Shown: piece after piece, positions 14,841-64,000 of the stretch
Layout of the letters: each line of letters opens with the position of its first letter
Numbering within the stretch: position 1 is the stretch's first letter
NCBI GenBank assembly: GCA_002269645.1
Contig: NIVC01002338.1
Coordinates: 62,001 to 126,000 of the forward strand
DNA from: Macrostomum lignano
Taxonomy: Eukaryota
Length of the DNA: 64,000 nucleotides
Reading direction: 5' to 3'
Program-made: the position numbers and the translations under genes
Notes under the pieces: model-generated
Database searches by the model: none
What the model was told of the DNA's origin: nothing
Seen by the model: the letters and a program-made list of their open reading frames with translations, nothing else

Positions 14841-14850
14841 AAAAACTCAC

Positions 14851-15690: not shown

Positions 15691-15740
15691 GCAACCCTTG
15701 AAATTCTCCATCAGACGCAAAATCTGGTCATCTGACTGAC

Positions 15741-15865
15741 CTGAGTGTTAACCTCAGTCGCAGGCGAGCCCAGTGTATCCTCGAAATCTTCGTCTATGAA
15801 ACCCTCCGGAGTGATGCGACCGCCTGCGGCGGCTGCGGCGGCGAAATTCTCGTCAGATTGATCGT
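15741..15865 (-). CDS. ARHGAP1: ARHGAP1/8-like N-terminal acidic exon
   Basis: Acceptor TTTCTCAG, phase 1; DQSDENFAAAAAAGGRITPEGFIDEDFEDTLGSPATEVNTQ; donor GTCAGT, phase 0, compatible with the next exon. Confidence 0.78.
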
Positions 15866-15959
15866 CTGAGAAATCGGGAATAGAGATGGGAAATAGACTG
15901 GATAACTTATCTATGTGTAATTGACAGAAAGCATCTCAACTTCTTGTAATGTGAGACAA

Positions 15960-16235
15960 GATTGAGATTAGATGAGGGAGATAATGAGTGAGAGATGAGG
16001 AAGGCAACAACTGAGAGTAGATGAGAAAGGAAAGACATGAGAGTAGATGAGGAAGGCGACAAGTGAGAATAGATGAAGAAGACAAGGCATAAGATTAGAT
16101 GAGGGAGACACTGAGTGAGAGTAGATGAGAAAGGCAAGGCATGAGATTAGATGGCAGGGAGGCAGGGAGTGAGAGTAGATGAGAAAGGCAAGGCATGAGA
16201 TTAGATGGCAGGGAGGCAGGGAGTGAGAGTAGATG
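15960..16235. repeat. Purine-rich degenerate tandem repeat (about 52-bp unit)
   Basis: GAGTAGATGAG...GAGATTAGATG repeated. Confidence 0.7.
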
Positions 16236-17094
16236 TGGGCAGAATAGTTCAGTTTAATAAAATAGAATGATACAAAAACGCTTGCAAATTTAGAAAGAAG
16301 TGATCTATACCTAACTTACTGAGATAACCAGATACGAGGCAAAAAATCGATTTAAATAAAAAATCAGTCATTTGCATTATAGAAAAATTCCTATACGATC
16401 TTAAGAAAACAATTAAAGCATGAAAACAAGAAAAAAATAATCTGAAAATCAAAAGATGTCTACTTTAGAATCAAGTTCCGTTCACGTTATTGCAACAGAT
16501 TTGAGAGGACATTTAGATTTTTTATTAAATACTCCAGGTGCTTCTAGATCGTACTTACAGTAGCACTAAGAGTTATTAGAGTGCGACTTTTTAGTGTGAA
16601 AGTTAGCAAATCAAGAAATTTTTTTGAATTACTTGCAATTTAAAAAAGAAAATTAATATATGTTTTATGCTTTGATAATCATTCTTGATTGGTAATTGTG
16701 TGAACGTGCCTTTTAAAGAACAACTTTTAATTAGTATAATATTTAAATATAAATTTTTTATTTTATACCAATATTTTGACATTCCTCATCAGCTTCGGTT
16801 TCGCCCTATTCAATTGAACCTGAAAACAATTAAAATTATAATAATAAACTATTTTAATAAGCTTGTGAGCACCCTGGGGCATCGCCTTTGACGAAATCGT
16901 TCCACACACCATTGCTGCGGCAATTTCTGTCCATTCTGCTGACTCCTGAACGCATACAAGCTCGCCAATACTGTACACAGTCACGCAATCAAACACACGC
17001 TCACACAGGGTGTACATCGGCCCCTGACTTTCTAATCGTCAAGCATGTACACTCTGTGAGAATTGGGAGCTGGCCTTCATGGCTGTGAATTTAT

Positions 17095-20000: not shown

Positions 20001-23000
20001 TATCTCCAACACTTCATATCTCCGACACTTCATATCTCCGACACTCCATATCTCCGACACTCCATATCTTTGACACTTCATATCTTTGACACTCCATATC
20101 TCCGACACTTCATATCTTTGACACTCCATATCTTTGCCACTTCATATCTCCAACACTTCATATCTCCGACACTCCATATCTCCGACACTTCATATCTCCG
20201 ACACTTCATATCTTTGACACTTCATATCTCCGACACTCCATATCTTTGACACTTCATATCTCCGACACTCCATATCTCCGACACTCCATATCTTTGACAC
20301 TCCGTGTCTCCGACACTTCATATCTCCGACACTTCATATCTCCGACACTCCATATCTTTGACACTTCATATCTCCGACACTTCATATCTCCGACACTTCA
20401 TATCTCCGACACTTCATATCTCCGACACTTCATATCTCCGACACCCCATATCTCCGACACTTCATATCTCCGACACCCCATATCTCCGACACTTCATATC
20501 TCCGACACTTCATATCTCCGACACCCCATATCTCCGACACTCCGTATCTCTGACACTCCATATCTCCGACACTCCATATCTCTGACATTCCATATCTCTG
20601 ACACTCCATATCTCCGACACTCCATATCTCCGACACTTCATATCTCCGACACTTCATATCTCCGACACTCCATATCTTTGACACTTCATATCTCCAACAC
20701 TTCATATCTCCGACACTCCATATCTCCGACACTTCATATCTCCAACACTTCATATCTCCGACACTCCATATCTCCGACACTTCATATCTCCGACACTTCA
20801 TATCTCCGACACCCTATATCTCCGACACCCTATATCTCCGACACTCCATATCTTTGACACTTCATATCTCCGACACTTCATATCTTTGACACTTCATATC
20901 TCCGACACTCCATATCTTTGACACTTCATATCTCCAACACTTCATATCTCCGAAACTCCATATCTTTGACACTTCATATCTCCAACACTTCATATCTCCG
21001 ACACTCCATATCTCCGACACTTCATATCTCCGACACTTCATATCTCCGACACCCCATATCTTTGACACTCCATATCTTTGACACTTCATATCTCCAACAC
21101 TTCATATCTCCGACACTCCATATCTTTGACACTTCATATCTCCGACACTCCATATCTCCGACACTCCATATCTTTGACACTCCGTGTCTCCGACACTCCA
21201 TATCTTTGACACTTCATATCTCCAACACTTCATATCTCCGAAACTCCATATCTTTGACACTTCATATCTCCAACACTTCATATCTCCGACACTCCATATC
21301 TCCGACACTTCATATCTCCGACACTTTATATCTCCGACACCCCATATCTTTGACACTCCATATCTCCGACACTTAATATCTCCGACACTCCATATCTTTG
21401 ACACTTCATATCTCCGACACTTCATATCTCCGACACTCCATATCTCCGACACTCCATATCTTTGACACTTCATATCTTTGACACTCCATATCTCCGACAC
21501 TTCATATCTTTGACACTCCATATCTTTGACACTTCAAATCTCCGACACTCCATATCTTTGACACTTCATATCTCCGACACTCCATATCTCAAACACGTCA
21601 TATCTCCGACACTTCATATCTCCGACACCCCATATCTCCGACACTTCATATCTCCGACACTTCATATCTCCGACACTCCATATCTTTGACACTCCATATC
21701 TCCGACACTTCATATCTCCGACACTCCATATCTTTGACACTTTATATCTCCGACACTTCATATCTCAGACACTCCATATCTTTGACACTTCATATCTCCG
21801 ACACCCCATATCTCCGACACTTCATATCTCCGACACTCCATATCTCCGACACTCCATATCGTTGACACTTCATATCTTTGACACTCCATATCTCCGACAC
21901 TTCATATCTTTGACACTCCATATCTTTGACACTTCATATCTCCAACACTTCATATCTCCGACACTCCATATCTCCGACACTTCATATCTCCGACACTTCA
22001 TATCTCCGACACTTCATATCTTTGACACTTCATATCTCCGACACTCCATATCTTTGACACTTCATATCTCCGACACTCCATATCTCCGACACTCCATATC
22101 TTTGACACTCCGTGTCTCCGACACTTCATATCTTTGACACTTCATATCTCCGACACTCCATATCTTTGACACTTCATATCTCCGACACTTCATATCTTTG
22201 ACACTTCATATTTCCGACACTTCATATCTTTGACACTTCATATCTCCGACACTTCATATCTCCGACACCCCATATCTCCGACACTTCATATCTCCGACAC
22301 TCCATATCTCCGACACTTCATACCTCCGACACCCCATATCTCCGACACATCATATCTCCGACACCCCATATCTCCGACACTTCATATCTCCGACACCCCA
22401 TATCTCCGACACTTCATATCTCCGACACCCCATATCTCCGACACTCCATATCTCCGACACTTCATATCTCCGACACCCCATATCTCCGACACTTCGTATC
22501 TCCGACACTCCATATCTCCGACACTTCATATCTCCGACACCCCATATCTCCGACACTTCATATCTCCGACACTTCATATCTCCGACACTTCATATCTCCG
22601 ACACCCCATATCTCCGACACTCCGTATCTCTGACACTCCATATCTCCGACACTCCATATCTCTGACATTCCATATCTCTGACACTCCATATCTCCGACAC
22701 TCCATATCTCCGACACTTCATATCTCCGACACTTCATATCTCCGACACTCCATATCTTTGACACTTCATATCTCCAACACTTCATATCTCCGACACTCCA
22801 TATCTCCGACACTTCATATCTCCGACACTTCATATCTCCGACACCCTATATCTCCGACACCCTATATCTCCGACACTCCATATCTTTGACACTTCATATC
22901 TCCGACACTCCATATCTCCGACACTCCGTGTCTCCGACACTCCGTGTCTCCGACACTTCATATCTCCGACACTTCATATCTTTGACACTTCATATCTCCG

Positions 23001-24845
23001 ACACTCCATATCTTTGACACTTCATATCTCCAACACTTCATATCTCCGAAACTCCATATCTTTGACACTTCATATCTCCAACACTTCATATCTCCGACAC
23101 TCCATATCTCCGACACTTCATATCTCCGACACTTCATATCTCCGACACCCCATATCTTTGACACTCCATATCTTTGACACTTCATATCTCCAACACTTCA
23201 TATCTCCGACACTCCATATCTTTGACACTTCATATCTCCGACACTCCATATCTCCGACACTCCATATCTTTGACACTCCGTGTCTCCGACACTTCATATC
23301 TCCGACACCCCATATCTCCGACACTTCATATCTCCGACACTTCATATCTCCGACACCCCATATCTCCGACACTCCGTATCTCTGACACTCCATATCTCCG
23401 ACACTCCATATCTCTGACATTCCATATCTCCGACACTCCATTTCTCTGACACTTCATATCTCCGCCACTCTATACGACACTTCATATCTCCGACACTTCA
23501 TATCTCCGAAACTCCATATCTTTGACACTTCATATCTCCAACACTTCATATCTCCGACACTCCATATCTCCGACACTTCATATCTCCGACACCCCATATC
23601 TTTGACACTCCATATCTTTGACACTTCATATCTCCAACACTTCATATCTCCGACACTCCATATCTTTGACACTTCATATCTCCGACACTCCATATCTCCG
23701 ACACTCCATATCTCCGACACTCCGTGTCTCCGACACTCCGTGTCTCCGACACTTCATATCTTTGACACTTCATATCTCCGACACTTCATATCTCCGACAC
23801 CCCATATCTCCGACACTTCATATCTCCGACACTCCATATCTCCGACACTTCATACCTCCGACACCCCATATCTCCGACACTTCATATCTCCGACACCCCA
23901 TATCTCCGACACTTCATATCTCCGACACTTCATATCTCCGACACCCCATATCTCCGACACTCCGTATCTCTGACACTCCATATCTCCGACACCCCATATC
24001 TCTGACATTCCATATCTTCGACACTCCATTTCTCTGACACTTCATATCTCCGCCACTCTATACGACACTTCATATCTTCGACACATCATATCTCCGACAC
24101 TCCATATCTCCGACACTCCATTTCTCTGACACTTCATATCTCCGACACTCCATATCTCCGACACTTCATATCTCCGACACTCCATATCTCCGACACTTCA
24201 TATCTCCGACACCCCATATCTCCGACACTTCATATCTCCGACACTTCATATCTCCGACACCCCATATCTCCGACACTCCGTATCTCTGACACTCCATATC
24301 TCCGACACTCCATATCTCTGACATTCCATATCTCCGACACTCCATTTCTCTGACACTTCATATCTCCGCCACTCTATACGACACTTCATATCTCCGACAC
24401 ATCGTATCTCCGACACTCCATATCTCCGACACTCCATTTCTCTGACACTTCATATCTCCGACACTTCATATCTCCGACACTTCATATCTCCGACACCCCA
24501 TATCTCCGACACTTCATATCTCCGACACCCCATATCTCCGACACTTCATATCTCCGACACTTCATATCTCCGACACCCCATATCTCCGACACTCCGTATC
24601 TCTGACACTCCATATCTCCGACACTCCATATCTCTGACATTCCATATCTCCGACACTCCATTTCTCTGACACTTCATATCTCCGACACTCCATATCTCCG
24701 ACACTCCATTTCTCTGACACTTCATATCTCCGACACTTCATATCTTTGACACTTCATATCTCCGACACTCCATATCTTTGACACTACATATCTCCGACAT
24801 CCCATATCTTCGACACTTCATATCTCCATACTTCATATCTCCGAC
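17095..24845. repeat. 16-bp satellite (CATATCTCCGACACTT/C), about 7.75 kb, roughly 480 units, intronic
   Basis: Uninterrupted 16-bp period; larger blocks are duplicated. Accounts for all the SPTLHISDTSYLRH ORFs. Confidence 0.97.
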
Positions 24846-26115
24846 AAGCTCAATCTCAACCATAACAGAGATCTGAAGTTTCTGATATGAAAGTTCGTAG
24901 ATATGAAACCCCACAAAGGGGCCCTAAAGCGGCCCTAACTTTATCATAGGCGCGAATTGAACAATGAACGAACCCAATATTTCTACCGCAAACAACAAAA
25001 AAAGTAATTTGAACCGGCACTAGTGAGCTAGGATGCATGTACTGTAATAGCATCGGCAGTGGCAGCTTGTGAATCATAAAATAGTCACGCGGTGAGTTTG
25101 CATAAGTAATAAATAATAAGTGGAACAGATAAGTAAACAGCAATACTATATACGGTCAAATAGCTTCGGATGTAAGCTATAAAAAACAGACGCATGCGAC
25201 GCAGCGGGTGCAGTTAATTGAACAAATTGTTTTTTGCTCCAAAAAATAAACCATAGACCATTATAGTATAGTAGACATTAATTAAGCCAGCTTGTCAAGT
25301 GTGAATGTGGTGCATAACTATAATTTTAACCTTACGATTGTGTGGGTCCGTTGCTGGACTTACCGTCATAGTACTCGAAAATATCGTAAGCTATATTTAA
25401 CGGGGTTGTTGCGGAAAATTACACACATTTTCCATACTGAATATGGCAACTACTACAGGAACAGGAATTATAAATATATAGAACAGAAAATCAACAAAAA
25501 AGACGCACGCAATATAATAGCATAGTCAGCCACTCATTTCAAGACAGTTATTTTGCATGCAATTAGTATATTTAACTATTGATGAAATTAAAATAATTCT
25601 ATTGAACTATACTTGCCAACACATAGGCTTACCAGTAGTACCGGTTTTGCTAAATGCCTTAGCTGCTGAAAGCGCGTATGTTCTCAAATTACTGATAGTA
25701 GTCTATACGAATATGAAGGAAGATTTTGAGTAAAATGACGAAAAACTTTGTTTCTTAGAAAATATATTTCTAAAAACTGGCTTTACGCAAAAATGTACAA
25801 CTACGAAATACAAAAGAAAATACAAAGTTGTATAGCAATAATCATTGGCGCTGTTTCACTGGCTGTTCAGCTACAAATCTAACTACTCTTCGCCCAGGCC
25901 CTAGTTGAGGGACAGCCTGGCAGACGAAGTTTCCCTAACGTTTGTTACTCGGCAAGGGCTTCGAGTAAGTTCAGTAGGAAATTTAAATTTACCCAAGAAG
26001 TCCAATCCTTCCTTACCGAAGCCTACAAACTAAAACACACACCAAAACCACTCGTGATCAGTGCCCCAAACAGTTGAGCTTTTCTCGTTACCGCTTCTGA
26101 GTTTTAACTCTCGAT

Positions 26116-30075: not shown

Positions 30076-30921
30076 TTAGGTAAGCGGATGCAACTGATTG
30101 ACATGCCTATCCAACGAATAGCGGTGGGTGAACTGCTTTGGACAGAATCTGCAAGCAAATGGTTTATGCCCGCTGTGCGTGCGCAGATGCGAGTCCAGGT
30201 GCACTTTCTGACGAAACGATTTATCACAATGGACGCAAGGAAACGGTCGCTGATCGGAATGTTTCATCATGTGCCGACTCAGCGAGTATTGATGCGGAAA
30301 CGATCGATCGCACGAGGTGCATTTGAAAGGCCGAGCGCCAGAATGCGTCATCAAATGATGGCTCAGGTGAGTTTTCTGTTTAAACTGCTTGTAGCAGACA
30401 TCGCATTTGTAAGGCTTGTCTGGATCATCTTGCTGCGGAGGCTGCTGATGCTGCTGCTGTTGCTGCTGACTTGGCTGCTGTGGCTGATGCTGCTGCTGTT
30501 GCTGCTGACTCTGACCCTGTCCCTGCTGCTGTCTAGGCTGGCCCATAGTCAGCGGATCGTGTATGACGTTGTGCCTCTCAAACGATGCCCGATCGCCAAA
30601 CGACCTCTCGCAGATGTTGCAAGTGTAAACTGGGGCAAAGCTAATACGAAAGTTGCCTATTAATAAATCGCCAAAATTGAATGCGGCTGCGGGATTCTGG
30701 AGCTGCTGGCTGGCAGCTGGATTAGGCTGCTGGGGTAATTGCTGCTGCAACTGATGCGGTATGGCCTGCTGCAGAGGCTGCTGGTGATGCTGATGCTGAT
30801 GCTGCTGATGTGACAGAGGCAACTGAGACTGCTGATGCAGCTGGTGATGCTGCACTAATTGCTGGTTGTGCAAGACAACGTCTCGATTTAGTAAAACTGG
30901 CTTGTATGCATCCTGAAGCAT
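30076..30921 (-). CDS. Gln/His-rich C2H2 zinc-finger transcription factor (5 fingers)
   Basis: One isolated finger (CNICERSF...HNVIH) plus four tandem fingers with SGARP/SDQRP/SGHKP linkers; TAA at 30076. The ATG at 30921 follows a pyrimidine-rich AG, so the true start could lie upstream. Confidence 0.88.
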   Translation of the reverse strand: MLQDAYKPVLLNRDVVLHNQQLVQHHQLHQQSQLPLSHQQHQHQHHQQPLQQAIPHQLQQQLPQQPNPAASQQLQNPAAAFNFGDLLIGNFRISFAPVYTCNICERSFGDRASFERHNVIHDPLTMGQPRQQQGQGQSQQQQQQHQPQQPSQQQQQQHQQPPQQDDPDKPYKCDVCYKQFKQKTHLSHHLMTHSGARPFKCTSCDRSFPHQYSLSRHMMKHSDQRPFPCVHCDKSFRQKVHLDSHLRTHSGHKPFACRFCPKQFTHRYSLDRHVNQLHPLT

Positions 30922-31756
30922 GTCAAGAAACTGATTTGAGAAGAATGACAAAAATTTCTATACATACTTTTTCAACATTGCACAAATAAGATTCCACATG
31001 TTTTTATATGCATTCTGAGTTTGAGCATGTATCTTTTGACAATTTACTGTCATAAAATAGCATAAAGTAACAGTATTCACGATGATTAATTCAATACTAT
31101 GTATAAGATATTCAAAATCTTTCTAATTTTTTCCAGTAAGCTATTCATAGCCTATAAATATATAACAACCATTCCAACAAATATTCAATAACAATGAAAC
31201 CAAAAGCAAACCGTTGCCTCGCTTTAGTCACTTAACCTTATTCTTTTCAGCAAAGCTCTTTATATAAGCATTGCAATTTAATTTTATAGATGAAATGCAA
31301 ATAGAGAAAGATTATGTAATTTATGAAAGGGGTATGCAATACACATGCTAAGAATATAAATTAGTAAGAATATAGGCTACATATGAATTAAAAATCTAGG
31401 TTGCTTTTAAACTCTTGTTTTTTTTACAGATGAGCTTCACTGTCTCTTTGTGCCTTTACTACTTTACTGTGCCCTACTGTGTCTTTTATAGATATTTTAG
31501 AGACAAGCGCAAGTCCCATATGAATTATTAATAAACAAGGCAAACAATTGAGGCAACAAATTTTGATGGTGAGCAATATAAAATAAATAAATGCCTCTGG
31601 AGGCTATACAAGCTTCTAGAAACATGAAAGAAAGTTCTGGGACCAAAATCTTTCAAAAGAAAGCAGAGCTTCTAAAAGCCAGCATATCAGGCTGGGAAAA
31701 GCTAATATCTATATTAAAAGTTATAAGCAACACTTTTGAGTCTTGTCTTCTAACTA

Positions 31757-34169: not shown

Positions 34170-34625
34170 ACATCATGCTAAAGGATAGAGATCCTGTACA
34201 TCTACCAACACAAAGGATTCTGCTGCATCTGTTGCCCAAGGTACACTAGCTGCTTGACAATCTACTTGCCAAAGGCATGATTTGACTGAGCTTTTCTAGC
34301 TACAACACCCCACTGGTGATCATCCCAAAGAAAAACAGAAACCTGAGGATTGTACAAGATTTTCCGAGTCTGAACCAAAAGTGTGAGTACTTTCTATACC
34401 CAATTCCTAACATCCAAGAAGCATTTGATAGCCTTGAAGGAAGCCAGCTGTTTAGCAATTTTGATATGAATAGCAGCTACTATCAGATTTCACTGTATCA
34501 AGAAGATCAAGACCTGACTGCCTTCACCATGCTGCACTGCAGACAATTTGCCTATAATTTTATGCTGATAGAACTAAGCTCAGCCTTAGCCAGCTTTATG
34601 TGCCTAATGAATGCTCTGCTCAACA
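34170..34625 (+). pseudogene. Decayed Ty3/gypsy reverse transcriptase fragment
   Basis: LLAKGMI*...PLVIIPKKNRNLRIVQDFPSLNQ...YPIPNIQEAFDSLEGSQLFSNFDMNSSYYQI...DLTAF...MLIELSSALASF: RT motifs 1-3 with stops; truncated before the YxDD motif. Confidence 0.85.
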
Positions 34626-35784
34626 GGATTGTCTACAATACTCATAGACATAATGCAACCATTGGTACCATCATTGGAGTTGTAATAGGCCTAAGATCTG
34701 GCAATAAGATCATTGTTTCCTCTTGTTTGTATGCCATTTTGGATAATAAAACAGAAGAAAAAAGAAGAAGAAAGTCCACTGCTAATAAATGGTTATGTAT
34801 ATATATTGTTGGGGGGTCATGTTTAGACCACTATGTGGGTAAAAGTAGAGACCAAAAAGTAAAAAGAATGATACAATTAAATTCTATAAAAAATTCTAAA
34901 ACAAAAAACAGGTGCCAGCAATTGGGGGACTAGATTCATTAGTAGAAATAGTTGTTTAAAGTTTTTAAATGAAATTTTACAATACATAAAAAATTTCTTC
35001 AAAAAACCTATAAAAAGTAAAATTTATTGTCTTTTCTATCTATTATCATTAACATTGTTTTACTACACCTTTCTTTTTTTATGTGTTGTCATTTTTTAGC
35101 AACATAGACAAAAAAATCACAAATGTGAAATTTAAAGAAAAAACCAAAAACTTTAAAATGTATATAACTTTTGTCAACATTGACTGATTCTCTAATAAAA
35201 TCATTTTGAAGCAAAATTTTATAATCTTTTGAACCTTTCCATCTTTATTCCATGAAAACTTCTATTTTTTAGAGTTTTTCTTAATCAAACATACTACCCT
35301 TTTTACCAATTTTCTAATTTTTCCACTTTTCCACATGGCTCAATGGACTTACTACCAATGTTTGGCTAGATCAATTCATGAGCAATGTACATGCCACCCT
35401 AGTTTTGACAAACAAGAGTTCCTGAGTTTTCTAGAGCCTGACTGACAAGTGACACACTAGTGACACTAGTGTTGTGACTAGCAGCATAGGTAAGTGACTA
35501 GCCAAGAGGCAAAGAATGTGCCAGCCAATGTGAATCAACACTGCAGCCAGAGCCTGCTATTCTCATGGAACTCCTATGCTGGGTGATCATAAGCTGCCCT
35601 GGCCCATGCTTTGTGAATGACTATGGTGTCTAGAGCCATCTGGCCAGATAGCATTCATCGCAGGAGGCAGCCCTAGCCAAAAAAACAAAGCCAGTCTTGT
35701 GGGCATGCAGCTGCAGTCAGAAATGGCTGGCTAGCAACTTTGCCTCTGCTGCAGCCCTATTGCAGCCAATGGCCATTTTTGTGG

Positions 35785-35900
35785 ATGGCGTCCGGCGCGG
35801 ATTGGCCTGGCGGCGGCGCGGCGCGCGGCGGCGGCGCGGCGCGTGGCGGCTGCGCGCGGTGGCGTGGCGTGTGGCGGCGGCGCACGGCGCGCGGCGAGCC
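35785..35900. repeat. GC-rich (GGCGC)n-like simple repeat
   Basis: Direct inspection. Confidence 0.75.
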
Positions 35901-38393: not shown

Positions 38394-38838
38394 GGCAGTT
38401 GTTATTTGTCCAGTGACCAGATGAATAGCGATGTGGTTATTTTTCCAGTTACTGGATAATGACTATGCTTTCCTATTTATCCGGTTAATACTGGACAAAT
38501 CAATAGGCATTTTGTTATTTGTCCAGTAAAATTGATATTGCTAAAATATCTATTTCATAGAAACTACAAGGGTAAATATTCCTAGACTACAAAGACTTCT
38601 TACTTGTATCTTGATTATTATGTTGTTATACTAGTGTGGGTCTTATACACCAAATTATGCCAAACTGAATACACTGCTTTGCTTACACTAGGTCTAGTAT
38701 ACAAGAAAATTAATCAGTATACAAGAAAAGGTCTTAAACATCTAAAATATACATCACGAAACAAATAGATACTTGTGTTAGTAATTTAACCAGACAAATA
38801 GCAAAAAGGCACTGGTCACCGGACAAATAACAACTGCC
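38394..38838. mobile_element. Non-autonomous TIR element with 9-bp TSD (MULE- or Merlin-like)
   Basis: TIR GGCAGTTGTTATTTGTCC(A/G)GTGACCAG; TSD TAAATTAAA (38385-38393, 38839-38847); subterminal TTATTTGTCC repeats. Confidence 0.85.
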
Positions 38839-39034
38839 TAAATTAAAACAACTGATATCTGATAATTTTAGTGCAGAAACAAAAGCTTTAAGACAACTTA
38901 GTGTTAATGGTGGGGTGGAAATAGAGCTAAGGCGTATGACAATAATATTAAATTCAATTTAATTTACTATTGCTACAAAAAAGAAAAATGTTGAATATAA
39001 AGGCCTATTTTTATTAGGCCTATTAAAATAAAAT

Positions 39035-39395
39035 GGCAGTTGTTATTTGTCAGGTGACTGGACAAATGGCTTTTCCTATTTGTCTAGTTAAATTGCTAAC
39101 ACAAGTATCTATTTGTTTAGTGATAAATATTCTAGAATTTTAAGTCCTTTTCTCCTGTCCTGATTAATATTTCGTTATATACTAGTGCAAGCAAAGCGCA
39201 AGCAGATATGTGTAATACATATGCGATTCAGCATAATTTGGTATATAAGACATATACCAATAAAACAACTAATAGCCTAATCAATATACAAGTGAGAAGT
39301 CTGTTGAAGTCCAGGAATTTGCACCCTTAGGCTTGTAGTTTCTGTAGGCCTAGCATAAAATATCAATTTAACCAGACAAATATCAAAATGGGCAT
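39035..39395. mobile_element. Second, end-truncated copy of the 38394 element family
   Basis: Starts GGCAGTTGTTATTTGTC; its left arm is the reverse complement of 38707-38838; the right terminus is missing. Confidence 0.7.
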
Positions 39396-40804
39396 TCTTT
39401 CGTTTCCCTGCTGCATGATATTTTGCTTTCAGTCAGAACAAAAAAATAAACATCATGTGCGATTCCTGCATGCAGGCATGCATTTTGTGCATACAGACAA
39501 CATATATTGGCCTTTTCGTATTGCTTGTTCTGAGAACCAATTTGTGAAATATAACTTTTTGTCTCCATAACTAGAGGGAGATACGTGCTATAAAGTTTTT
39601 ATTATTGAATGACAATCGCCAAGAAGAAAGTGAAAAATTGTGCAAAGTGAGGCTGTTAAGGCAGTCAAACATTCAACAGAATTAAATAGTTATACTGCTG
39701 TTTTTCTTGGAAGATCCGAACCGATTCTGATTCTGGAATTAGTAATATTGTGGCAGGCGGATGCCACTATTGATTTGAAGTTCGAAACGGTGACAAATTT
39801 TGCCTGTTGGAACTGCCCGTGTGGTGTTCCCTTGTTTGCCCTTCAGAGTCTGGATTTGCGTCCATTGCGTTTTCCATTGTATTTTCCACGCGGTGCGCGT
39901 TCGTTCCCAGGTGCTGGTTCATTTGTTGGAATGCGCTCCCCACGGTTTATTTTTTGCTCGATCCAGCGCTTGTGCAGTGCGCATCCATTGCTTAGTCCCG
40001 TCACTGCTCCAGCGGGAGAGCTACTTTTACCTGTTATATAAACCCTACCTTTTGGTGCGATAATGTAAGAGTTTTTTTCCCCTCTGCTCTACTCTGGCTC
40101 TGTTTTAAACATTTTCCTCTGCGCATTTCTCTCGTTTTAACCAGTTTATAATTATCCGGCGCCGCCGACGAATTACACTCGCTCGTAGTCATTAATATTT
40201 TAATAATAAGTAGTAAGCCTGCTCAATTCCATCTTAAGGAACATTTAATAAACGATAAGCTCCATTTATTCATTAAACTATAAGCCATAGTATTTATTTG
40301 AGTCATTTGCCCGTGGGGTGTAAAACAACCAAGTTCTCATCTCAAAGATAGCTCTGAGACTTATCCGTTCCGTAATACGTGAATTACGGTGGTGGCAGCA
40401 ACTACCCTACTGAAAGTAACAAACTCAGCTATTCGACGCATTATTTTACGGTGTCAGGAATCTCCAATTACAGTGTTTCATCGACTTGAACGACCTCGCC
40501 GCTACACGACCGCTCCGCTACGATTACGACTACCCTCCCCCCGGAACTTGAGGACCCCGGCTGTCGGAGTAAAACAGGAGAAGAATTTCGTTGCGATTCA
40601 TCGGTGCGATTTCCGGCTTGATTCGTGCGAACGCAACGTCAACCGGTTTCGAAGAAAACCCGAACAACCCCATTTCAAATTTTTTCCAAATTTTTATTTT
40701 CTTCTCCGCCCCCACCTCAATATGAAACGCATTTGTTTCCCCATTGATATTCGCATTGATATTCAAATTTTAACAAAAGCAAAATACTAAAAGCAACCCG
40801 TAGC

Positions 40805-41640
40805 ATGAAACTTTACACAGAGTAAACTGCAACCGTGAAACGACTATTGGTCAAGTTTCAGCTCGATATGTAACTTTAGCTCTGAGCAGGAGCGATTTTC
40901 GATGTGTTCCATTTAAAATACATGTGATTCCAAAATTCATATTGATATTCGAGTACAGGTACTTCTGCTTCACCGATCTTGATGAAACTTTACACAGAGT
41001 AAACTGCAACCGTGAAACGACTATTGGTCAAGTTTCAGCTCGATATGTAACTTTGGCTCTGAGCAGGAGCGATTTTCGATGTGTTCCATTTAAAATACAT
41101 GTGATTCCAAAATTCATATTGATATTCGAGTACAGGTACTTCTGCTTCACCGAGCTTGATGAAACTTTACACAGAGTAAACTGCAACCGTGAAACGACTA
41201 TTGGTCAAGTTTCAGCTCGATATGTAACTTTGGCTCTGAGCAGGAGCGATTTTCGATGTGTTCCATTTAAAATACATGTGATTCCAAAATTCATATTGAT
41301 ATTCGAGTACAGGTACTTCTGCTTCACCGATCTTGACGAAACTTTACACAGAGTAAACTGCAACCGTGAAACGACTATTGGTCAAGTTTCAGCTCGATAT
41401 GTAACTTTGGCTCTGAGCAGGAGCGATTTTCGATGTGTTCTATTTAAAATACATGTGATTCCAAAATTCATATTGATATTCGAGTACAGGTACTTCTGCT
41501 TCACCGATCTTGACGAAACTTTACACAGAGTAAACTGCAACCGTGAAACGACTATTGGTCAAGTTTCAGCTCGATATGTAACTTTGGCTCTGAGCAGGAG
41601 CGATTTTCGATGTGTTCCATTTAAAATACATGTGATTCCA
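40805..41640 (+). repeat. Left arm: 177-bp satellite, about 4.7 units
   Basis: CATGTGATTC at 40921 and 41098 (period 177); units nearly identical. Confidence 0.95.
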
Positions 41641-44133
41641 AACAACAACAACAACAACAGAGTACGCTGCCAGTTCGCAAAAGCAGCGTCAGATGGCGCG
41701 CTTCGAAGCTTGGGCGCGAACAAAAGCCGCACCGCCGGCAGAGTCCGGGGCGCCGGCGTCAGCCAGCAGACAGTCGACGTAGCGCCGAGTCCTCGCCTGT
41801 CCCCGCCGGTAGGGTGCCTGCAACGTAAGTAGCAGCACCTCCTGCACCGGCTCCGGACAGTAGGCCTCGGCGCGGATGACGTGGCCTGCCAGCTGGAGTC
41901 GCCGACGGCGCAGCAGATCGCTAGGACGGGCCAGGCCGGCGCGATGATGGAGCGCCGTGTTGGTGACTCGCTCGTTGCCGATCTTGAAGGCGGCGCGCAG
42001 CAGGCCAGCGTGCGCCGCGTCGACTTGAGCCTCGAGCGAGTCTATCAGCGTCCAGGTCTCGGCGTTGTATAACAGGACGGTTTCGATCACCGCCTGGAAC
42101 AGCGCCGCCCTCTGGCGGTCCGGTAGGGCCTCGGACTGCAGGACTGACCTTATAGAACGAAAGGCAGCCCAGGCAAGTCCTCGGCGACGCCGCAGATCCT
42201 CGCGGACGTCGGGAACCAGACCGCCGAGGTAGACGAACTGCTGACATCTTGGAAGCTCACTCGCCTGTCCGTCAGCGCCTCGGCAGAAGATTGCAGCCTC
42301 GGTGTCGTCCGGCACGCATAGCACGACGGTCTTCTGCGTGTTGACCACCAGGCCGACGCTCGCCGCAACGGCAACCAGTCTATCCAGCTGTCGTTGGGCG
42401 CCCTCGACGGTCGAGGACAGCAGGGCGAGGTCATCGGCGTAGCCAAGCACGCTGAGCCGTCTCTCCGGTTGGCGTCGACCCACGCGTCGCCGCAGCAGGA
42501 AGCCGTCGTCGTTGGAAGGCAGAGCAGTCCGTAGCACCCAGTCAAGCACCAGAATAAATAGGAACGGCGCTAGCGTATCTCCCTGGAGCACCCCGGAGGA
42601 TGTCTCGAAGAAATCCGATAGGCCGTCCGGTGTTGAGACAGCAGCCGTCGTGCCGTGGTACAGCGCCATGACAGCAGAAATCAGCAGCTCTGGCACGTTG
42701 TACGCACGGAGCACCTCTGGGAGCGCGTCCCTCACGACCGAGTCGAAGGCCTTCCTGAAATCGACGAAGATCAGGATCAGGGTCAACTGGCGGATGCGCG
42801 CCTCCTCGATGACTCGCCGAAGAGCCAGGATCTGCGTCACTGTGCTGCGATGGGGCCGGAATCCGTTCTGCTCAGGCCACAGGTACGGGTCCAGCACAGT
42901 CTGTAACCGCGATAGCAGCATGCGGCTGAACAGCTTCGCGGCGCAGGATTGTAGGCAGATGCCTCGATGCTCCTCGAGCTTGGTGGTGCCCGGCTTCTTT
43001 GGAATGGCGACGATGTGCGCCGTGGTCCATTCGTTTGGCGCCACCTCACCGGAAAGCACGCGGTTCATCACTCTGGCGACCTCAGTGGCCACGCAGTGGA
43101 TCCGCAGCGCCTCGGTTGGCATCTCGTCCGGACCAAGCGCTTTGGCGCCCGGCGACTGCCGAGCGAACTTCACAACGTCGGCTGTGCTGACTGGGGCAAC
43201 GTTGAAGCTCTCCTCCGCCGGCAACGGCGTCTCCGGCGGCAGCCTCAGATTTTCTGGAAGCGGAGGGGGCGGCGCGTTGACAATGGCGGCGAAGAACTCG
43301 CGCAGCTCGTACCTGCGCTCATCCGGAATGTCGCCTGCCTGGTTGAGCGCGATGCGCCGCTTTCGCCCCGTCAGAGTGTTGATGACGGACCAGGCCACGC
43401 GCCCTCTGGAATCGGGCCCTGCGGCAGAGACGGCTTGGGTGGCGTCATCGACAGCGGACTGCTGCCGCTGCAGGTAGACAGCCGCCAGAGCCTCCTCCGC
43501 CTCGCGAGTTTGCCGCCCACTCAGACGGAGCCTCTCCAGATCTTCCCTCGCTTCGTCGATCGCGGGTCGTCCTGCCAGACCGCTGGGCCGGTCGCATCAG
43601 TGGGACTGCTTGCTCCGCATCGGCTCGAACTGCAGCGCTCACCTCCGCGTACTCGGCTCCTCCACGCTTGTCGCCCAGCGCAGTGACAAAGGCACCGGCA
43701 AAGCGACGTAGTAGCGCCGCGGTGGCCGCTTTGGCGGACGGTAGAGCGGGTCCCGAAGCCGAAGGTCGCAGATGAGCAGCCGATGGTCGGACCGCAGAGC
43801 CAGCGGCGTAATGGTGCGGCAGTTGGTGACGCGGCGGCGCACACAAAAGCGCACAAGCACGTGGTCGAGCTGTGCCAGCCTCCGCGTAGCGTTCCGGCCG
43901 CGCGCGTTCCGCCGCCTCCGCTTGCAGCCCACGAAGGTCGCGAGCCTGCCCGGTGACTTGCGGAATCTGGTGTTGGCCGACACCATGTCCTGTCTCTCCA
44001 GGAAGTCCTCTAGCGCTCCGGAGTTGCCGTTCTCGCGCGCTGTCACAAACAGCGATCGCTCGGACCTACGCAGAACTGCGTTCAGGTCTCCGAGAATGAC
44101 CACTGTGTCACGTTGCGCCATCTCCTCCACCTG
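41641..44133 (-). mobile_element. 5'-truncated RTE-clade-like non-LTR retrotransposon (partial APE endonuclease + RT), with (GTT)n 3' tail
   Basis: Endonuclease motifs VVILGDLNA, LDHVLV, SDHRLL (43.7-44.13 kb); RT ORF 41689-43398 with QNGFRP, FVDFRKAFDSV, GVLQGDTLAPFLF, YADD; frameshifts around 43.55-43.75 kb; (AAC)6 on the + strand at 41641-41658. Confidence 0.92.
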
Positions 44134-45525
44134 TACTCGAACATCAATATGAATTTTGGAATCACATGTATTTTAAATGGAACACATCGAAAATCGCTCC
44201 TGCTCAGAGCCAAAGTTACATATCGAGCTGAAACTTGACCAATAGTCGTTTCACGGTTGCAGTTTACTCTGTGTAAAGTTTCGTCAAGATCGGTGAAGCA
44301 GAAGTACCTGTACTCGAATATCAATATGAATTTTGGAATCACATGTATTTTAAATGGAACACATCGAAAAATCGCTCCTGCTCAGAGCCAAAGTTACATA
44401 TCGAGCTGAAACTTGACCAATAGTCGTTTCACGGTTGCAGTTTACTCTGTGTAAAGTTTCGTCAAGATCGGTGAAGCAGAAGTACCTGTACTCGAATATC
44501 AATATGAATTTTGGAATCACATGTATTTTAAATAGAACACATCGAAAATCGCTCCTGCTCAGAGCCAAAGTTACATATCGAGCTGAAACTTGACCAATAG
44601 TCGTTTCACGGTTGCAGTTTACTCTGTGTAAAGTTTCGTCAAGATCGGTGAAGCAGAAGTACCTGTACTCGAATATCAATATGAATTTTGGAATCACATG
44701 TATTTTAAATAGAACACATCGAAAATCGCTCCTGCTCAGAGCCAAAGTTACATATCGAGCTGAAACTTGACCAATAGTCGTTTCACGGTTGCAGTTTACT
44801 CTGTGTAAAGTTTCGTCAAGATCGGTGAAGCAGAAGTACCTGTACTCGAATATCAATATGAATTTTGGAATCACATGTATTTTAAATGGAACACATCGAA
44901 AATCGCTCCTGCTCAGAGCCAAAGTTACATATCGAGCTGAAACTTGACCAATAGTCGTTTCACGGTTGCAGTTTACTCTGTGTAAAGTTTCGTCAAGATC
45001 GGTGAAGCAGAAGTACCTGTACTCGAATATCAATATGAATTTTGGAATCACATGTATTTTAAATGGAACACATCGAAAATCGCTCCTGCTCAGAGCCAAA
45101 GTTACATATCGAGCTGAAACTTGACCAATAGTCGTTTCACGGTTGCAGTTTACTCTGTGTAAAGTTTCGTCAAGATCGGTGAAGCAGAAGTACCTGTACT
45201 CGAATATCAATATGAATTTTGGAATCACATGTATTTTAAATAGAACACATCGAAAATCGCTCCTGCTCAGAGCCAAAGTTACATATCGAGCTGAAACTTG
45301 ACCAATAGTCGTTTCACGGTTGCAGTTTACTCTGTGTAAAGTTTCGTCAAGATCGGTGAAGCAGAAGTACCTGTACTCGAATATCAATATGAATTTTGGA
45401 ATCACATGTATTTTAAATGGAACACATCGAAAATCGCTCCTGCTCAGAGCCAAAGTTACATATCGAGCTGAAACTTGACCAATAGTCGTTTCACGGTTGC
45501 AGTTTACTCTGTGTAAAGTTTCATG
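44129..45525 (-). repeat. Right arm: 177-bp satellite in inverted orientation, about 7.9 units
   Basis: Reverse complement of the left-arm unit; same CCATTT/CTATTT polymorphism; a 1-bp insertion near 44370. Confidence 0.95.
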
Positions 45526-45788
45526 CTACGGGTTGCTTTTAGTATTTTGCTTTTGTTAAAATTTGAATATCAATGCGAATATCAATGGGGAAACAAATGC
45601 GTAATATGAAATGAAAAGCCTCAAAGACGAAGTAACAAACAAAGTGATTTCTAATTTCAAGCTTAACTCTAACTGTGTAAAAACAGAGAGTTCTGCTTAA
45701 ATTTACTAACTGTTTAGAATAAAATAAATGATTTGTGACATTTTGTGGCATGTAACATAGGCCCTAACTAGTATATAGAAACTGCTGC

Positions 45789-46362
45789 GGCAATCCTACA
45801 CTTCCGTTCGGTAAATTATTTTGACACTGAATTTTGAACAGGCGTGTTAAATAACAATGTAGGCCTAACCAAACAAAACTGAAACAGTGGAACATGGTAG
45901 CAGTCTGTTAGAGTGCATAGTCACTTAGAGTGTGTCTGCAGGTCATTAAGGTGTCTATAATGGATAGTATTAGTAATGTCCAATCCAGTACAGGATAGCC
46001 CCAAATGGACATTGGGGATATAGACAATGCCAGAGGAATTCCTCAATGTGTGCATTGAAGAGAGCATCGCTCGTGCTATGCATGTTGCAGATCTTGCACT
46101 TTGCGTGGGCCTATGTGCCCTCCATGGTGTTGGTGTGGACTGTTGGGTCTGCTGGATTTACGAAGTGCAGCTGATGGGAAATGAGAAATTGAAGCTCAAA
46201 AAACAAGCAGCTCACAAGCAACAGCTCCCTTAAACTGACACCCCCTTAAACTCTGTTCGCTCAAACTTTTGGCCATAGACACATTGCCAATTGACGTCAT
46301 TTGACTCAGTGGTACGAATTCAAATGTTAAAATAATTTACCGAACGGAAATGTAGGATTGCC
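45789..46362 (-). mobile_element. Non-autonomous Merlin element with a decayed C-terminal transposase fragment
   Basis: TIR GGCAATCCTACA(C/T)TTCCGTTCGGTAAATTATTTT; minus-strand HQLHFVNPADPTVHTNTMEGT*AHAK...LFNAHIEEFLW...YWIGHY; no TSD recognisable. Confidence 0.85.
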
Positions 46363-60071: not shown

Positions 60072-61068
60072 GGGTCTACGAAGTTTGCCTGCCGGACGTT
60101 TGCCAGCCGACGTTTGCCTGCGGGACGTTTGCCAGCCGACGTTTGCCAGCGGGACATTTGCCAGCCGACGTTTGCCAACCGGACATTTGCAGGCGGCAAT
60201 TGGTTAAAGAAGTAATGCCCTCTCTAGGCTTACATGTACTTGCGTTTGAAAACTGAGGACATAGCACTAATCTAATTCCACCTTGCTCCCTACAACTGCT
60301 ATTAAATATACAGGTTTACTAACAAACTACTGTCCAGGCTTATTGAAGTAATTGATCTTGTCTGCCTAAATAGAAAGCTAAAAATACAAAATAGGAGTTT
60401 CCAATGTCACAATTGATGTCTATGTATGCCATGGAATGGCCCTTTCCATCTCAAGTGGCCAACCAAGCTAAGTGTTTACAAGCTAAATGGGAAAAGACTG
60501 AGACATCCATAATGGTATAGGCTTAGTCTCGCCTATATATACTTAACTCAAAAGCCAAACTCTGCTTAATGGAGTTTGGCCATGACAGCGTGCACTTGAC
60601 AAGCTGCATTGGAATTAATTCACTTACTTTTGGATCTCCCAATGAACTGGGAAATGGGAATAGAAACTGGGAAAAGCGATACAAAGCTGTCAGAAGTAAA
60701 CTTTATAATATTTTCACATCCAAAGAACTTTTTGTTAAACTAGATGTTAGATTGATGAACTGCATGATTTGTATAGATTTCGTTTTCGAACTTTTACACA
60801 TGCGAAGAACCGCCAAAAGTTGGGCTAAAAAACAAACTGCGAAAATTTCAGTATCAAATTTTTTCACTCACTGACTTAATGTTGGCTGGCAAACGTCGGC
60901 TGGCAAACGTCGGCTGGCAAACGTCCCGCAGGCAAACGTCCCGCAGGCAAACGTCCCGCAGGCAAACGTCCCGCAGGCAAACGTCCCGCAGGCAAACGTC
61001 CCGCAGGCAAACGTCCCGCAGGCAAACGTCGCGCAGGCAAACGTCGCGCAGGCAAACGTCGTTATCCC
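60072..61068. mobile_element. TIR element with inverted arrays of 14-15-bp repeats, 8-bp TSD
   Basis: Left array of GGACGTTTGCC(T/A)GC (60080-60200); right array of GGCAAACGTCCCGCA (60882-61060); TSD AGCACGAG (60064-60071, 61069-61076). Confidence 0.8.
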
Positions 61069-61460
61069 AGCACGAGAATTGTCCGCAGACGAATTGCCCG
61101 CCGAGATTTGCCCGCAATGCTTTTTTCTGCAGAGCATTTGGCCACGCAGCAGCAAATTCTGTCTGCATTGCAACCCCCCTCTAATGCTAGTACCGCGTAA
61201 GTCTTAATAAAGAGATTTTGGCGACAAAGCGCCACGGCATATGCATGAATTAATAGCTCACCGATGTACTCCTGCATGTATTAGAACTGAATACCTACAA
61301 AAATATGAATTGGATATGCAGTTACTATCAAAACGTTTTGATCGGCTAAATCTATTACTTACTTAAGCATTAGGGAGGCAATGCAGACAGAATCTAGCTG
61401 CCAAATGCGCTGCAGGAAAAATGCATTTGCTGGCAAATCTTAGCAGAAAATTCTCCAGCG
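61069..61460. mobile_element. Related older TIR element, host of the 60072 insertion
   Basis: About 61095-61190 is an imperfect inverted repeat of about 61365-61455; degenerate AATTGCCCGC units. Confidence 0.6.
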
Positions 61461-63286: not shown

Positions 63287-63382
63287 CTGAAAGTTTTGGT
63301 ATTTATATATTTAGAATAATAAGTGTATTGAACTTTATAGGGCTTGACTAACTTCGAATCAGAATGAAGTAAAAAAGCTCAC

Positions 63383-64000
63383 TAAAACACTTTCTCCTGT
63401 CCTGGCTCAGCGCGATAGAACCGGCTGGACACTTGTGACACGCAGAGCGGGCCGCATTAGTGACATAATCAGACGATGGACATTTTTTGCACTGGGTGCT
63501 GCCAGACTTAGATGAATAAGTACCAGGTCCGCAATACCGGCACGAGGTCGATCCGCGTGTTTTCTCACTCCTTTGTCCAGCAGGGCAAGGCTTGCAGTAA
63601 GCCTGACCCGGCTTATCAGAATAGTAGCCAGGGGCGCATTGGGAGCCAGGAGATGTTGATTCCACACGGTTGATGTAATAGCCTCGCCGAGCGGGAATGC
63701 ATGAAGTTGCATAATGATTAGGTTGATAATAGCCTTTTGGGCATGGGGTGCAGCTCAAACTTCCATATTTTCCTGAGTAGGAACCCCATGAGCAACCTGT
63801 GCAACCAAGACCTGTTCCCGAGCCATAGGTACCTGGACGGCACTTGTGGCAAGATCTGCGGTCGGAAGCAGCCGTGTAACCGGCAGAGCAAGGCGTGTCC
63901 TTCACCGCTCCTTCCTGATTAACATAATGATGGTATCTCGCTTTTTTGCAACTCGATTGGCCTGTCGAAGGCTGGAAGTAGCCGCGCGAGCATTTTTTAC
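63383..64000 (-). CDS. Cys-rich repeat/kringle protein exon (GCC2/GCC3, Ephrin_rec_like-type repeats); open to the window edge
   Basis: Repeated C..C..G.Y/F....G...C..C motifs (CPKGYYQPNHYATSC, CAPGYYSDKPGQAYCKPCPAG, CGPGTYSSKSGSTQCKKC); donor GTGAGC at 63382. Confidence 0.85.

What the first reader, a model, noticed from the sequence alone, without database searches (positions are those of the whole stretch)
40727..45602. Foldback DNA element with satellite-built arms whose only core is a truncated LINE
Seen: identical about 80-bp inverted termini, an exact 8-bp TSD (AATATGAA), and arms of about 4.7 and 7.9 copies of a 177-bp unit pointing inward. Between the arms there is only a 5'-truncated RTE-type element. 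Known: ordinary target-primed insertion leaves co-oriented flanks, and foldback elements with tandem-repeat TIRs exist (Drosophila FB, Galileo, sea-urchin TU). Inference: either a LINE landed on the symmetry axis of a satellite palindrome, or a DNA transposon carries an RT as cargo and moves it as a unit. The second case would be a class I/II hybrid that also seeds satellites.
Basis: partly seen in the sequence, partly recalled or inferred. Interest (0 to 1): 0.85.

Follow-up and report, generated by a model that had tools for sequence, protein, structure and literature searches.

The report
Foldback transposon with nested dead LINE
A 4.9-kb non-coding foldback DNA transposon, whose two inverted arms are built from a 177-bp repeat, has a broken, 5'-truncated RTE-like retrotransposon copy in its centre. 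This is most likely an ordinary one-off nested insertion, not a new hybrid mobile element.

Summary
The element spans 40727-45602. It has 100% identical 80-bp inverted termini and an exact direct 8-bp duplication, AATATGAA. Its inward-pointing arms hold 4.7 and 7.9 copies of a 177-bp unit. Between the arms there is only a minus-strand LINE (41643-44128).

The LINE is dead. It starts at residue 110 of a roughly 936-aa endonuclease+RT protein and carries two frameshifts. Its 3' end is complete: the (TTG)6 tail abuts the left arm. Five relatives from metagenomes end in the same (TTG)n tail but have unrelated flanks, so the LINE family exists independently of the foldback element. The 5' junction shows possible CAGGT microhomology, and the LINE has no target duplication of its own. 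These are the marks of a LINE integrating into existing foldback DNA, either at the hairpin loop or with loss of the centre.

Foldback elements with satellite-like arms, 8-10-bp duplications and variable non-coding middles are already known (Tetris, FB, Galileo, TU). The "hybrid cargo" reading has no support here. It also cannot be excluded, because no other copy of the terminus, unit or junctions exists in the window or in any collection I could search. I rate it a new member of a known kind, of low to moderate interest.

The parts
40719..40726 (.). Left copy of the 8-bp target-site duplication, AATATGAA
   Evidence: Read directly. It is identical to 45603-45610 and in direct orientation. The flanks beyond it are unrelated.
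40727..40806 (+). Left 80-bp non-repetitive terminus (ACGCATTTGTTTCCCC...). It contains two copies of ATTGATATTC 12 bp apart.
   Evidence: It is 100% reverse-complementary to 45523-45602.
40807..41642 (+). Left arm: 4.72 copies of the 177-bp unit. It ends at unit position 128 (...GATTCCAAA).
   Evidence: Tandem Repeats Finder, score 1641; unit-by-unit listing.
41643..41662 (-). LINE 3' tail: (TTG)6 on the minus strand, directly abutting the left arm
   Evidence: The same (TTG)n tail, about 50 nt after the stop codon, is seen in relatives L001, L002, L003, L124 and L125.
41689..43398 (-). Reverse-transcriptase ORF (569 aa) of the LINE
   Evidence: RVT_1, E 1.5e-28; 85% identity to a metagenome protein and up to 92% to Macrostomum lignano LINE fragments.
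43550..43720 (-). Segment with two compensating frameshifts (approximate positions 43710 and 43570) that put stop codons into the main reading frame
   Evidence: Residues 261-302 of the relatives align in another frame, and stops appear in the main frame.
43639..44128 (-). C-terminal part of the apurinic-type endonuclease domain. The copy begins at residue 110 of the 936-aa relative, so this is the 5'-truncated end of the LINE.
   Evidence: (Exo_endo_phos, E 0.0017, profile positions 145-203 of 225).
44129..44133 (.). Possible 5-nt microhomology (CAGGT on the minus strand) at the LINE 5' junction. These bases fit both the satellite unit and the LINE reading frame (Q-V-E-E here, Q-L-E-E in the relative).
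   Evidence: This is an inference, because the source copy of the LINE is unknown.
44129..45522 (-). Right arm: 7.87 copies of the 177-bp unit in inverted orientation. Its inner end is at unit position 154, which is 26 nt further into the unit than the inner end of the left arm.
   Evidence: (score 2751).
45523..45602 (-). Right 80-bp terminus
45603..45610 (.). Right copy of the target-site duplication, AATATGAA

Best explanation
The element is a non-autonomous foldback-type cut-and-paste DNA transposon. Each long terminal inverted repeat consists of an 80-bp unique end plus a tandem array of a 177-bp unit. It inserted at this site and made an 8-bp target duplication. It encodes no transposase, so it must have been moved in trans by an enzyme that remains unidentified.

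An RTE-like LINE copy, made by an independent autonomous family, integrated once into the interior of foldback-element DNA. Reverse transcription was primed from the plus-strand 3'-OH at ...GATTCCAAA of the left arm, which explains the intact (TTG)n tail at that junction. The cDNA was left incomplete. Its far end was joined to the right arm, probably through a short microhomology.

Two variants fit equally well:
- The LINE entered at the stem/loop boundary of the central hairpin, with no loss of DNA.
- The integration, or a later palindrome-centre deletion, removed the original centre and the inner part of the left arm.

In both variants the LINE is a dead passenger and the element is not a functional hybrid.

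**Shown:** the anatomy, the duplication, the defects of the LINE and its intact 3' end, and the independence of LINE relatives from the satellite.
**Inferred:** the order of events, the joining mechanism and mobilisation in trans.
For: **The two ends belong to one transposon insertion.**
- The direct 8-bp duplication flanks perfect 80-bp inverted termini, and the outer flanks are unrelated. This argues against a chimeric assembly or a chromosome-scale fold-back.
- The arms differ at 7 of 916 positions, in copy number, and by one single-base insertion. They are therefore not an artefactual perfect mirror.

**The LINE shows the marks of a separate integration.**
- Its 3' end is complete and carries the family tail (TTG)n. 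Five relatives have the same tail but unrelated flanks, and none lies next to the 177-bp unit.
- A full-length relative encodes endonuclease+RT in one 936-aa ORF. The family is therefore presumably autonomous and needs no DNA-transposon vehicle.
- The window copy starts at residue 110 and has two frameshifts, so it cannot supply endonuclease or RT.
- It has no target duplication of its own, and CAGGT microhomology is possible at the 5' junction. In L1, integrations linked to deletions or end-bridging also lack a target duplication (PMC7058536).

**The foldback frame is of a known kind.**
- Known foldback elements have middle regions of variable composition and no coding capacity, and 8-10-bp duplications (Tetris, PMC4079207).
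Against: - Only one copy could be examined. The terminus, unit, LINE and junctions occur nowhere else in the window. They were also absent from the protein collection, the metagenome contigs and the prokaryote genome contigs. 'One-off' therefore rests on parsimony, not on a census.
- If there was no deletion, the LINE lies within a nucleotide or two of the stem/loop boundary of the palindrome. For a random hit in 2.4 kb this has a probability of about 1%. That hints at structure-directed insertion, or at the deletion variant.
- The transposase superfamily is unknown.
Confidence: 0.8

Rival explanations
1. After the LINE integrated, the foldback element plus LINE went on transposing as one unit. 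This is passive co-mobilisation of a nested LINE by a DNA transposase. The genome would then hold a family of copies with the same two satellite/LINE junctions.
For: - The termini and the target duplication are perfect, so the last transposition was recent and could post-date the LINE.
- Indel decay in the LINE (2 in 2.5 kb) is similar to that in the arms (1 in 2.4 kb).
- From general knowledge: Drosophila FB elements are reported to carry internal DNA (FB-NOF) and to move large flanked segments.
Against: - No second copy was found anywhere, although the source genome itself could not be searched.
- LINE relatives have unrelated flanks.
- The LINE copy is defective, so the composite would gain no function. 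It would be a nested passenger, not a class I/II hybrid.
Confidence: 0.1
2. The assembly is wrong. The two halves (left end + array + LINE 3' part, and LINE 5' part + array + right end) come from different loci and were joined through the repeated LINE or the satellite. Alternatively, the array copy numbers are mis-estimated.
For: - Tandem arrays and kilobase-scale inverted repeats are hard to assemble.
- The window is very rich in tandem repeats.
- No reads are available to check the assembly.
Against: - The same 8-bp sequence flanks both ends in direct orientation, a 1 in 65,536 match by chance in this register. This ties the ends to a single insertion event.
- The LINE aligns colinearly with a relative across residues 110-936, with no break or rearrangement.
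- The arms carry private variants, which a mirror-image foldback-read artefact would not produce.
- Errors in array copy number remain possible, but they would not change the interpretation.
Confidence: 0.04
3. The LINE event itself created the inverted arrangement. It would be a LINE-mediated fold-back or bridging of two inverted DNA ends, as described for L1 in tumours, acting on an element that originally had a one-directional array.
For: - L1 cDNA can bridge DNA ends in inverted orientation and generate fold-back inversions (PMC7058536).
- The LINE lies exactly between the two inverted arrays and has no target duplication.
Against: - A fold-back made by the LINE would also invert the outer flanks. 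Here the flanks are unrelated and the 8-bp duplication is direct.
- Both arms join their 80-bp terminus at the same unit phase, and the terminus is present at both ends. The long inverted repeat is therefore a property of the transposon and predates the LINE.
Confidence: 0.03

Closest known systems
Tetris foldback transposon of Drosophila virilis (PMC4079207)
   Same: - Long terminal inverted repeats made of an outer unique domain plus a variable number of tandem repeats of satellite-monomer size (about 220 bp there, 177 bp here).
- Target duplications of 8-10 bp.
- A middle region of variable composition with no transposase, so the copies are non-autonomous.
- The proposed link between foldback arms and satellite DNA.
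   Different: - The 177-bp unit and 80-bp terminus here have no known relative, but they were not compared with Tetris because the Tetris sequence was not on hand. The host is a different, unidentified animal.
- The outer unique domain is much shorter here (80 bp against up to 866 bp).
- There is no inner TIR domain.
- The middle consists of nothing but a nested LINE.
- Spread of the unit as a satellite is not shown here.
Drosophila Foldback (FB) elements and FB-NOF
   Same: From general knowledge:
- Arms built of tandem repeats that point inward.
- Arms often unequal in length.
- Most copies have little or no central DNA.
- Some copies carry foreign DNA between the arms.
   Different: - FB makes 9-bp duplications (general knowledge); this element makes 8 bp.
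- FB arm repeats are short (10/20/31 bp) and not 177 bp.
- NOF is a specific companion sequence, not a LINE.
Galileo (P superfamily) of Drosophila buzzatii and D. mojavensis (PMC3573991)
   Same: [quoted passage not shown]
- Many copies consisting of the two TIRs only.
   Different: - Galileo makes 7-bp duplications; this element makes 8 bp.
- Galileo has known transposase-bearing copies; none is known here.
Sea-urchin TU elements
   Same: From memory, as a lead only:
- Long inverted terminal repeats containing tandem repeats.
- An 8-bp target duplication.
   Different: Not compared at sequence level.
LINE integrations that delete target DNA or bridge broken ends (L1-mediated deletions and fold-back bridging, PMC7058536; endonuclease-independent L1 insertion, PMC1920257, listed but not read)
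   Same: - A 5'-truncated LINE with an intact 3' tail.
- No target duplication.
- The two junctions lie in DNA that was not contiguous or co-oriented beforehand.
   Different: - Those cases are human L1. This is an RTE-like element with a (TTG)n tail in an invertebrate-like genome.
- The target here is the interior of a transposon palindrome.
- Whether any DNA was deleted cannot be decided.

Membership tests
Foldback-type DNA transposons (structural class) | Long terminal inverted repeats that contain tandem repeats oriented inward | tested here: met
   The arms are 916 and 1474 nt long and 99% complementary. Each is an 80-bp end plus a 177-bp array in the same phase.
Foldback-type DNA transposons (structural class) | Flanking target-site duplication that shows transposition | tested here: met
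   AATATGAA is exact on both sides and direct, and the outer flanks are unrelated.
Foldback-type DNA transposons (structural class) | Multiple dispersed copies that share the termini | not testable with these tools
   There is no other copy in the window. Exact-pattern scans of metagenome and prokaryote contigs were negative. The source genome was not available.
Foldback-type DNA transposons (structural class) | An identified transposase or autonomous partner (Mutator-like for FB, P-like for Galileo) | not testable with these tools
   The element has no transposase ORF, and no partner with this terminus is in the window.
Drosophila FB family | 9-bp target duplication (general knowledge) | tested here: not met
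   The duplication is 8 bp.
Galileo / P superfamily | 7-bp target duplication (PMC3573991) | tested here: not met
   The duplication is 8 bp.
hAT superfamily | 8-bp target duplication | tested here: met
   This length is not specific: P, Mutator and Merlin elements overlap it (general knowledge).
hAT superfamily | Termini beginning with the YARNG-type motif (CAG/TAG...; general knowledge) | tested here: not met
   The termini begin ACGCATTTG.
RTE-group non-LTR retrotransposons | A single long ORF with an N-terminal apurinic-type endonuclease and an RT, in a small element (about 3.2-3.5 kb) | tested here: met
   Relatives of 927-941 aa with Exo_endo_phos + RVT_1 lie on 3.3-3.6-kb contigs. The window copy aligns colinearly with residues 110-936.
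RTE-group non-LTR retrotransposons | A very short 3' UTR ending in short tandem repeats and not in poly(A) (Malik and Eickbush 1998, from memory) | tested here: met
   The stop codon is followed by about 45-60 nt and then (TTG)n, both in the window copy and in five relatives.
RTE-group non-LTR retrotransposons | Placement of the RT within the RTE clade in a phylogeny with reference clades | not tested
   No labelled reference RT sequences were on hand.
   The copy lacks residues 1-109 and has two frameshifts with in-frame stops.
No hit was found in any searchable collection.

The most novel reading that the evidence does not exclude
Two novel readings remain open.
- The foldback+LINE composite is itself a propagating family, with the same two junctions at several independent sites.
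- More interesting: cDNA of this RTE family is recurrently captured at the hairpin centre of foldback palindromes. It would act as a spacer 'patch' that stabilises palindromes which would otherwise break.

The position of the LINE at the stem/loop boundary is compatible with such structure-directed insertion.
Probability: 0.08. Interest if true: 0.55.

Novelty: new member of a known kind. Interest (0 to 1): 0.25.

Why it matters
As it stands, this is a clean, well-preserved example of two ordinary processes stacked on each other. One is a foldback transposon with satellite-like arms. The other is a nested, 5'-truncated LINE. Its main value is for repeat annotation of this genome.

It would matter more in two cases:
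- A genome census shows that the composite moves as a unit.
- LINE copies are found repeatedly at foldback centres. That would link retrotransposon cDNA capture to the repair and stabilisation of long palindromes.

A census showing 177-bp arrays outside the element would add another documented case of a foldback transposon seeding a satellite.

Tried and rejected
**Searches for other copies**
- I translated the one open frame of the 177-bp unit and searched the 5.8-billion-protein collection for other arrays. No hit.
- I scanned metagenome contigs for a 24-nt terminal probe. 0 hits.
- I scanned them again for the doubled terminal motif ATTGATATTCNNATTGATATTC. BLAST of the arm against them shows only the motif itself, so these are chance matches. 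One contig, L031, is merely a 12-bp minisatellite.
- The 24-nt probe in prokaryote genome contigs gave 0 hits.
- BLAST of the terminus, unit, LINE and flanks against the rest of the window found no other copy and no empty site.

**Other checks**
- To identify the organism I searched with a MIB_HERC2 exon. The best hits were only 43-51% identical and unnamed, so the host remains unidentified. The LINE points to Macrostomum-like sequences, at 92% amino-acid identity over the 237 aligned residues.
- Rfam and tRNA scans, run to test for an RNA-gene origin of the unit, found nothing.
- I tested whether the 80-bp terminus is a diverged copy of the unit. Only an 11-nt motif is shared, and 22 of 500 shuffles score as well. 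The support is weak, so I did not build on it.
- I checked the flanks of five LINE relatives for the satellite. None has it.

**Readings rejected**
- A LINE-made fold-back, because the target duplication is direct and the outer flanks are unrelated.
- A mirror-read assembly artefact, because the arms carry private variants and differ in copy number.
Full report

Yes, in every detail.
- The sequence and a unit-by-unit dissection show an element from 40727 to 45602. Its first and last 80 nt are perfect reverse complements.
- A 48-nt probe from the terminus occurs exactly twice in the 64-kb window, once on each strand, against 0 matches in 100 shuffles.
- Directly outside the termini lies AATATGAA on both sides (40719-40726 and 45603-45610) in direct orientation. 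The DNA beyond it is unrelated on the two sides.
- Tandem Repeats Finder reports a 177-bp period with 4.7 copies at 40805-41642 and 7.9 copies at 44129-45522, both at 99% matches.
- The inverted-repeat search pairs the whole 916-nt left arm with the outer 916 nt of the right arm at 99%, which is 909 of 916 positions.
- Both arrays begin in the same unit phase straight after the 80-bp end, so the arms mirror each other and point inward.
- The right arm has 558 nt more on its inner side.

**2. What lies between the arms?**

The 2,486 bp from 41643 to 44128 are 65% G+C in a window of about 35-45%. They encode a LINE on the minus strand.
- There is an RT ORF at 41689-43398 (RVT_1, E 1.5e-28). There is also the C-terminal part of an apurinic-type endonuclease at 43639-44130 (Exo_endo_phos, E 0.0017, below the Pfam cut-off).
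- Full-length relatives are 927-941 aa with endonuclease and RT in one ORF, on contigs of 3.3-3.6 kb.
- The window copy aligns colinearly with residues 110-936 of a 936-aa relative. It is therefore 5'-truncated inside the endonuclease domain.
- Two compensating frameshifts, near 43710 and 43570, put stop codons into the main frame. The copy is dead.
- The 3' end is complete. About 45 nt after the stop codon comes (TTG)6, which directly abuts the last base of the left arm (41642/41643).
- Five relatives from different metagenome samples (L001, L002, L003, L124, L125) end in the same way, with (TTG)n about 50-60 nt after the stop. Each is followed by different, unrelated DNA.
- A single endonuclease+RT ORF, small element size and a very short 3' UTR ending in a trinucleotide repeat are the hallmarks of the RTE group (general knowledge). 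I did not run a phylogeny.
- No DNA between the arms is anything other than LINE or satellite.

**3. The junctions**

- *3' side.* The plus-strand left arm ends ...GATTCCAAA-3' and is followed by (CAA)6, the complement of the LINE tail. This is what target-primed reverse transcription from that 3'-OH would leave.
- *5' side.* The LINE reading frame starts Q-V-E-E (CAG GTG GAG GAG), where the relative has Q-L-E-E. The bases CAGGT also fit the satellite unit (...GAGTACAGGT). Up to 5 nt of microhomology may therefore have guided the joining. This is an inference, because the source copy is unknown.
- *No target duplication.* The LINE has none of its own. Its upstream flank is the unit in one orientation up to position 154. 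Its downstream flank is the unit in the other orientation from position 128.
- *Pre-insertion shape.* Deleting the LINE in silico leaves a perfect hairpin with a loop of 24-26 nt (-108 kcal/mol, z = -28.5).

Two variants cannot be told apart here:
- The LINE entered at the stem/loop boundary of a palindrome whose arms were already unequal, with no loss of DNA.
- The integration, or a later centre deletion, removed the original centre and at least 558 nt of the inner left arm.

A random hit at the loop is about a 1% event. A deletion that spans the centre is also uncommon. In L1, integrations coupled to deletion lack target duplications, and L1 cDNA can bridge DNA ends even in inverted orientation (PMC7058536). 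Neither variant therefore requires anything new.

**4. Why it is a transposon and not an artefact or a LINE-made fold-back**

- A direct, non-palindromic 8-bp duplication flanking perfect inverted termini, with unrelated outer flanks, ties both ends to one cut-and-paste insertion.
- A fold-back generated by a LINE, or by a chimeric read, would also invert the outer flanks.
- The arms differ at seven positions, by one single-base insertion and in copy number. Some unit variants are shared between the arms and others are private. This is what real arrays evolving by unequal exchange look like, not a mirrored artefact.
- Errors in array copy number cannot be excluded without reads.

**5. How it most likely works**

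- The element encodes nothing. The only long non-LINE 'ORFs' are the one open frame of the 177-bp unit (177 = 59 codons), and they have no homologue in 5.8 billion proteins.
- It is therefore a non-autonomous foldback-type DNA transposon, mobilised in trans by an enzyme that recognises the termini.
- The motif ATTGATATTC(G) occurs twice in the terminus and once per unit. It is a candidate binding site. Statistically the sharing is only marginal, since 22 of 500 shuffles score as well.
- The 8-bp duplication is compatible with the hAT, P, Mutator or Merlin superfamilies, among others (general knowledge). The ends (ACGCA...) do not match the hAT terminal motif. The superfamily stays open.
- The LINE is a passenger from an independent, presumably autonomous family.

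**6. The 'hybrid' reading**

- It predicts recurrent junctions and, if it is to be more than a nested passenger, a useful RT.
- The RT/endonuclease is defective, so that feature was tested and not met.
- Recurrence could not be tested. Nothing related to the terminus, unit or junctions exists elsewhere in the window, in the protein collection, in metagenome contigs or in prokaryote genome contigs.
- The host genome is evidently not in the collections. A host exon finds nothing above 51% identity.
- The only external evidence goes the other way: all five LINE relatives have non-satellite flanks.
- Passive co-mobilisation after nesting remains possible, at about 10%. It would be unremarkable in kind, since Drosophila FB elements are known to carry internal DNA (general knowledge).

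**7. Comparison with known systems**

- The closest match is Tetris of Drosophila virilis. Its TIRs are built of an outer unique domain plus about 220-bp tandem repeats. Its duplications are 8-10 bp. Its middle domain is of variable composition without coding capacity, and no autonomous copy is known. Its TIR repeats also form satellite arrays (PMC4079207).
- Galileo has long, internally repetitive TIRs but 7-bp duplications (PMC3573991).
- Classical FB makes 9-bp duplications and sea-urchin TU makes 8-bp duplications (both from memory).
- The element here behaves like these. It is a new family, with a 177-bp unit and an 80-bp terminus that have no known relative, in an unidentified animal genome. 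I therefore rate it a new member of a known kind.

**8. Verdict**

The first alternative is favoured. The second is unsupported but not excluded.
- Interest is 0.25.
- The most novel reading still open is that the composite propagates, or that RTE cDNA is captured recurrently at foldback hairpin centres as a stabilising spacer. I give this about 8%.

Noticed in passing
window 60079-61116: A second foldback-like arrangement. An array of about 15-bp repeats (GTTTGCCAGCCGGAC)n at 60079-60190 faces the inverted array (GGCAAACGTCCCGCA)n at 60888-61060, across about 700 bp of unique DNA. No clear target duplication was seen.
   Followed up: partly
window 45789-46362 and 38706-39171: Two MITE-like inverted-repeat pairs close to the element. 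One has 67-nt arms at 78% complementarity, only 186 bp to the right of the foldback element. The other has 101-nt arms at 85%. Their target duplications are not obvious.
   Followed up: partly
window 41643-44128 compared with the rest of the window: The LINE is about 65% G+C in a window of about 35-45%. It is up to 92% identical in protein to LINE fragments embedded in Macrostomum lignano gene models. A host exon (MIB_HERC2, 1115-1561) finds nothing above 51% identity. Either the host is an unsampled relative of Macrostomum, or this RTE family was acquired horizontally.
   Followed up: partly
window 8957-24846: Very large simple arrays: (AGAC)n about 1.06 kb long at 8957-10015, a 21-bp unit x106 at 10451-12682, and a 16-bp unit x487 (7.75 kb, strong C-over-G skew) at 17093-24846. 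Many further minisatellites occur across the window.
   Followed up: no
window 40924-41832 (+), 44350-45453 (-), 44082-44342 (-): One reading frame of the 177-bp unit (59 codons) is open. This creates spurious ORFs of 302, 367 and 86 aa that run through the arms and into the LINE junctions. They have no homologues. Gene callers could mis-annotate them.
   Followed up: yes
window 34316-34933 (+): A second, weak reverse-transcriptase fragment (RVT_1, E 2.8e-05, below the Pfam cut-off). It lies near a GC-rich (GGC)n-type repeat at 35809-35896. It is probably another decayed retroelement.
   Followed up: no
window 1115-1561 (-), 30076-30951 (-), 63348-63905 (-): Host-like animal exons: MIB_HERC2 (E 1.3e-26), a C2H2 zinc-finger protein, and an ephrin-receptor-like/NCD3G cysteine-rich module. 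They show that the window comes from a metazoan genome.
   Followed up: partly
L031 3560-4880 (metagenome contig Ga0126342_10015663): A minisatellite of more than 1.3 kb with a 12-bp unit, CCATTGATATTC / CCATAGATATTC. It resembles the doubled motif in the 80-bp terminus. There is no similarity beyond the motif, so this is probably coincidence.
   Followed up: partly
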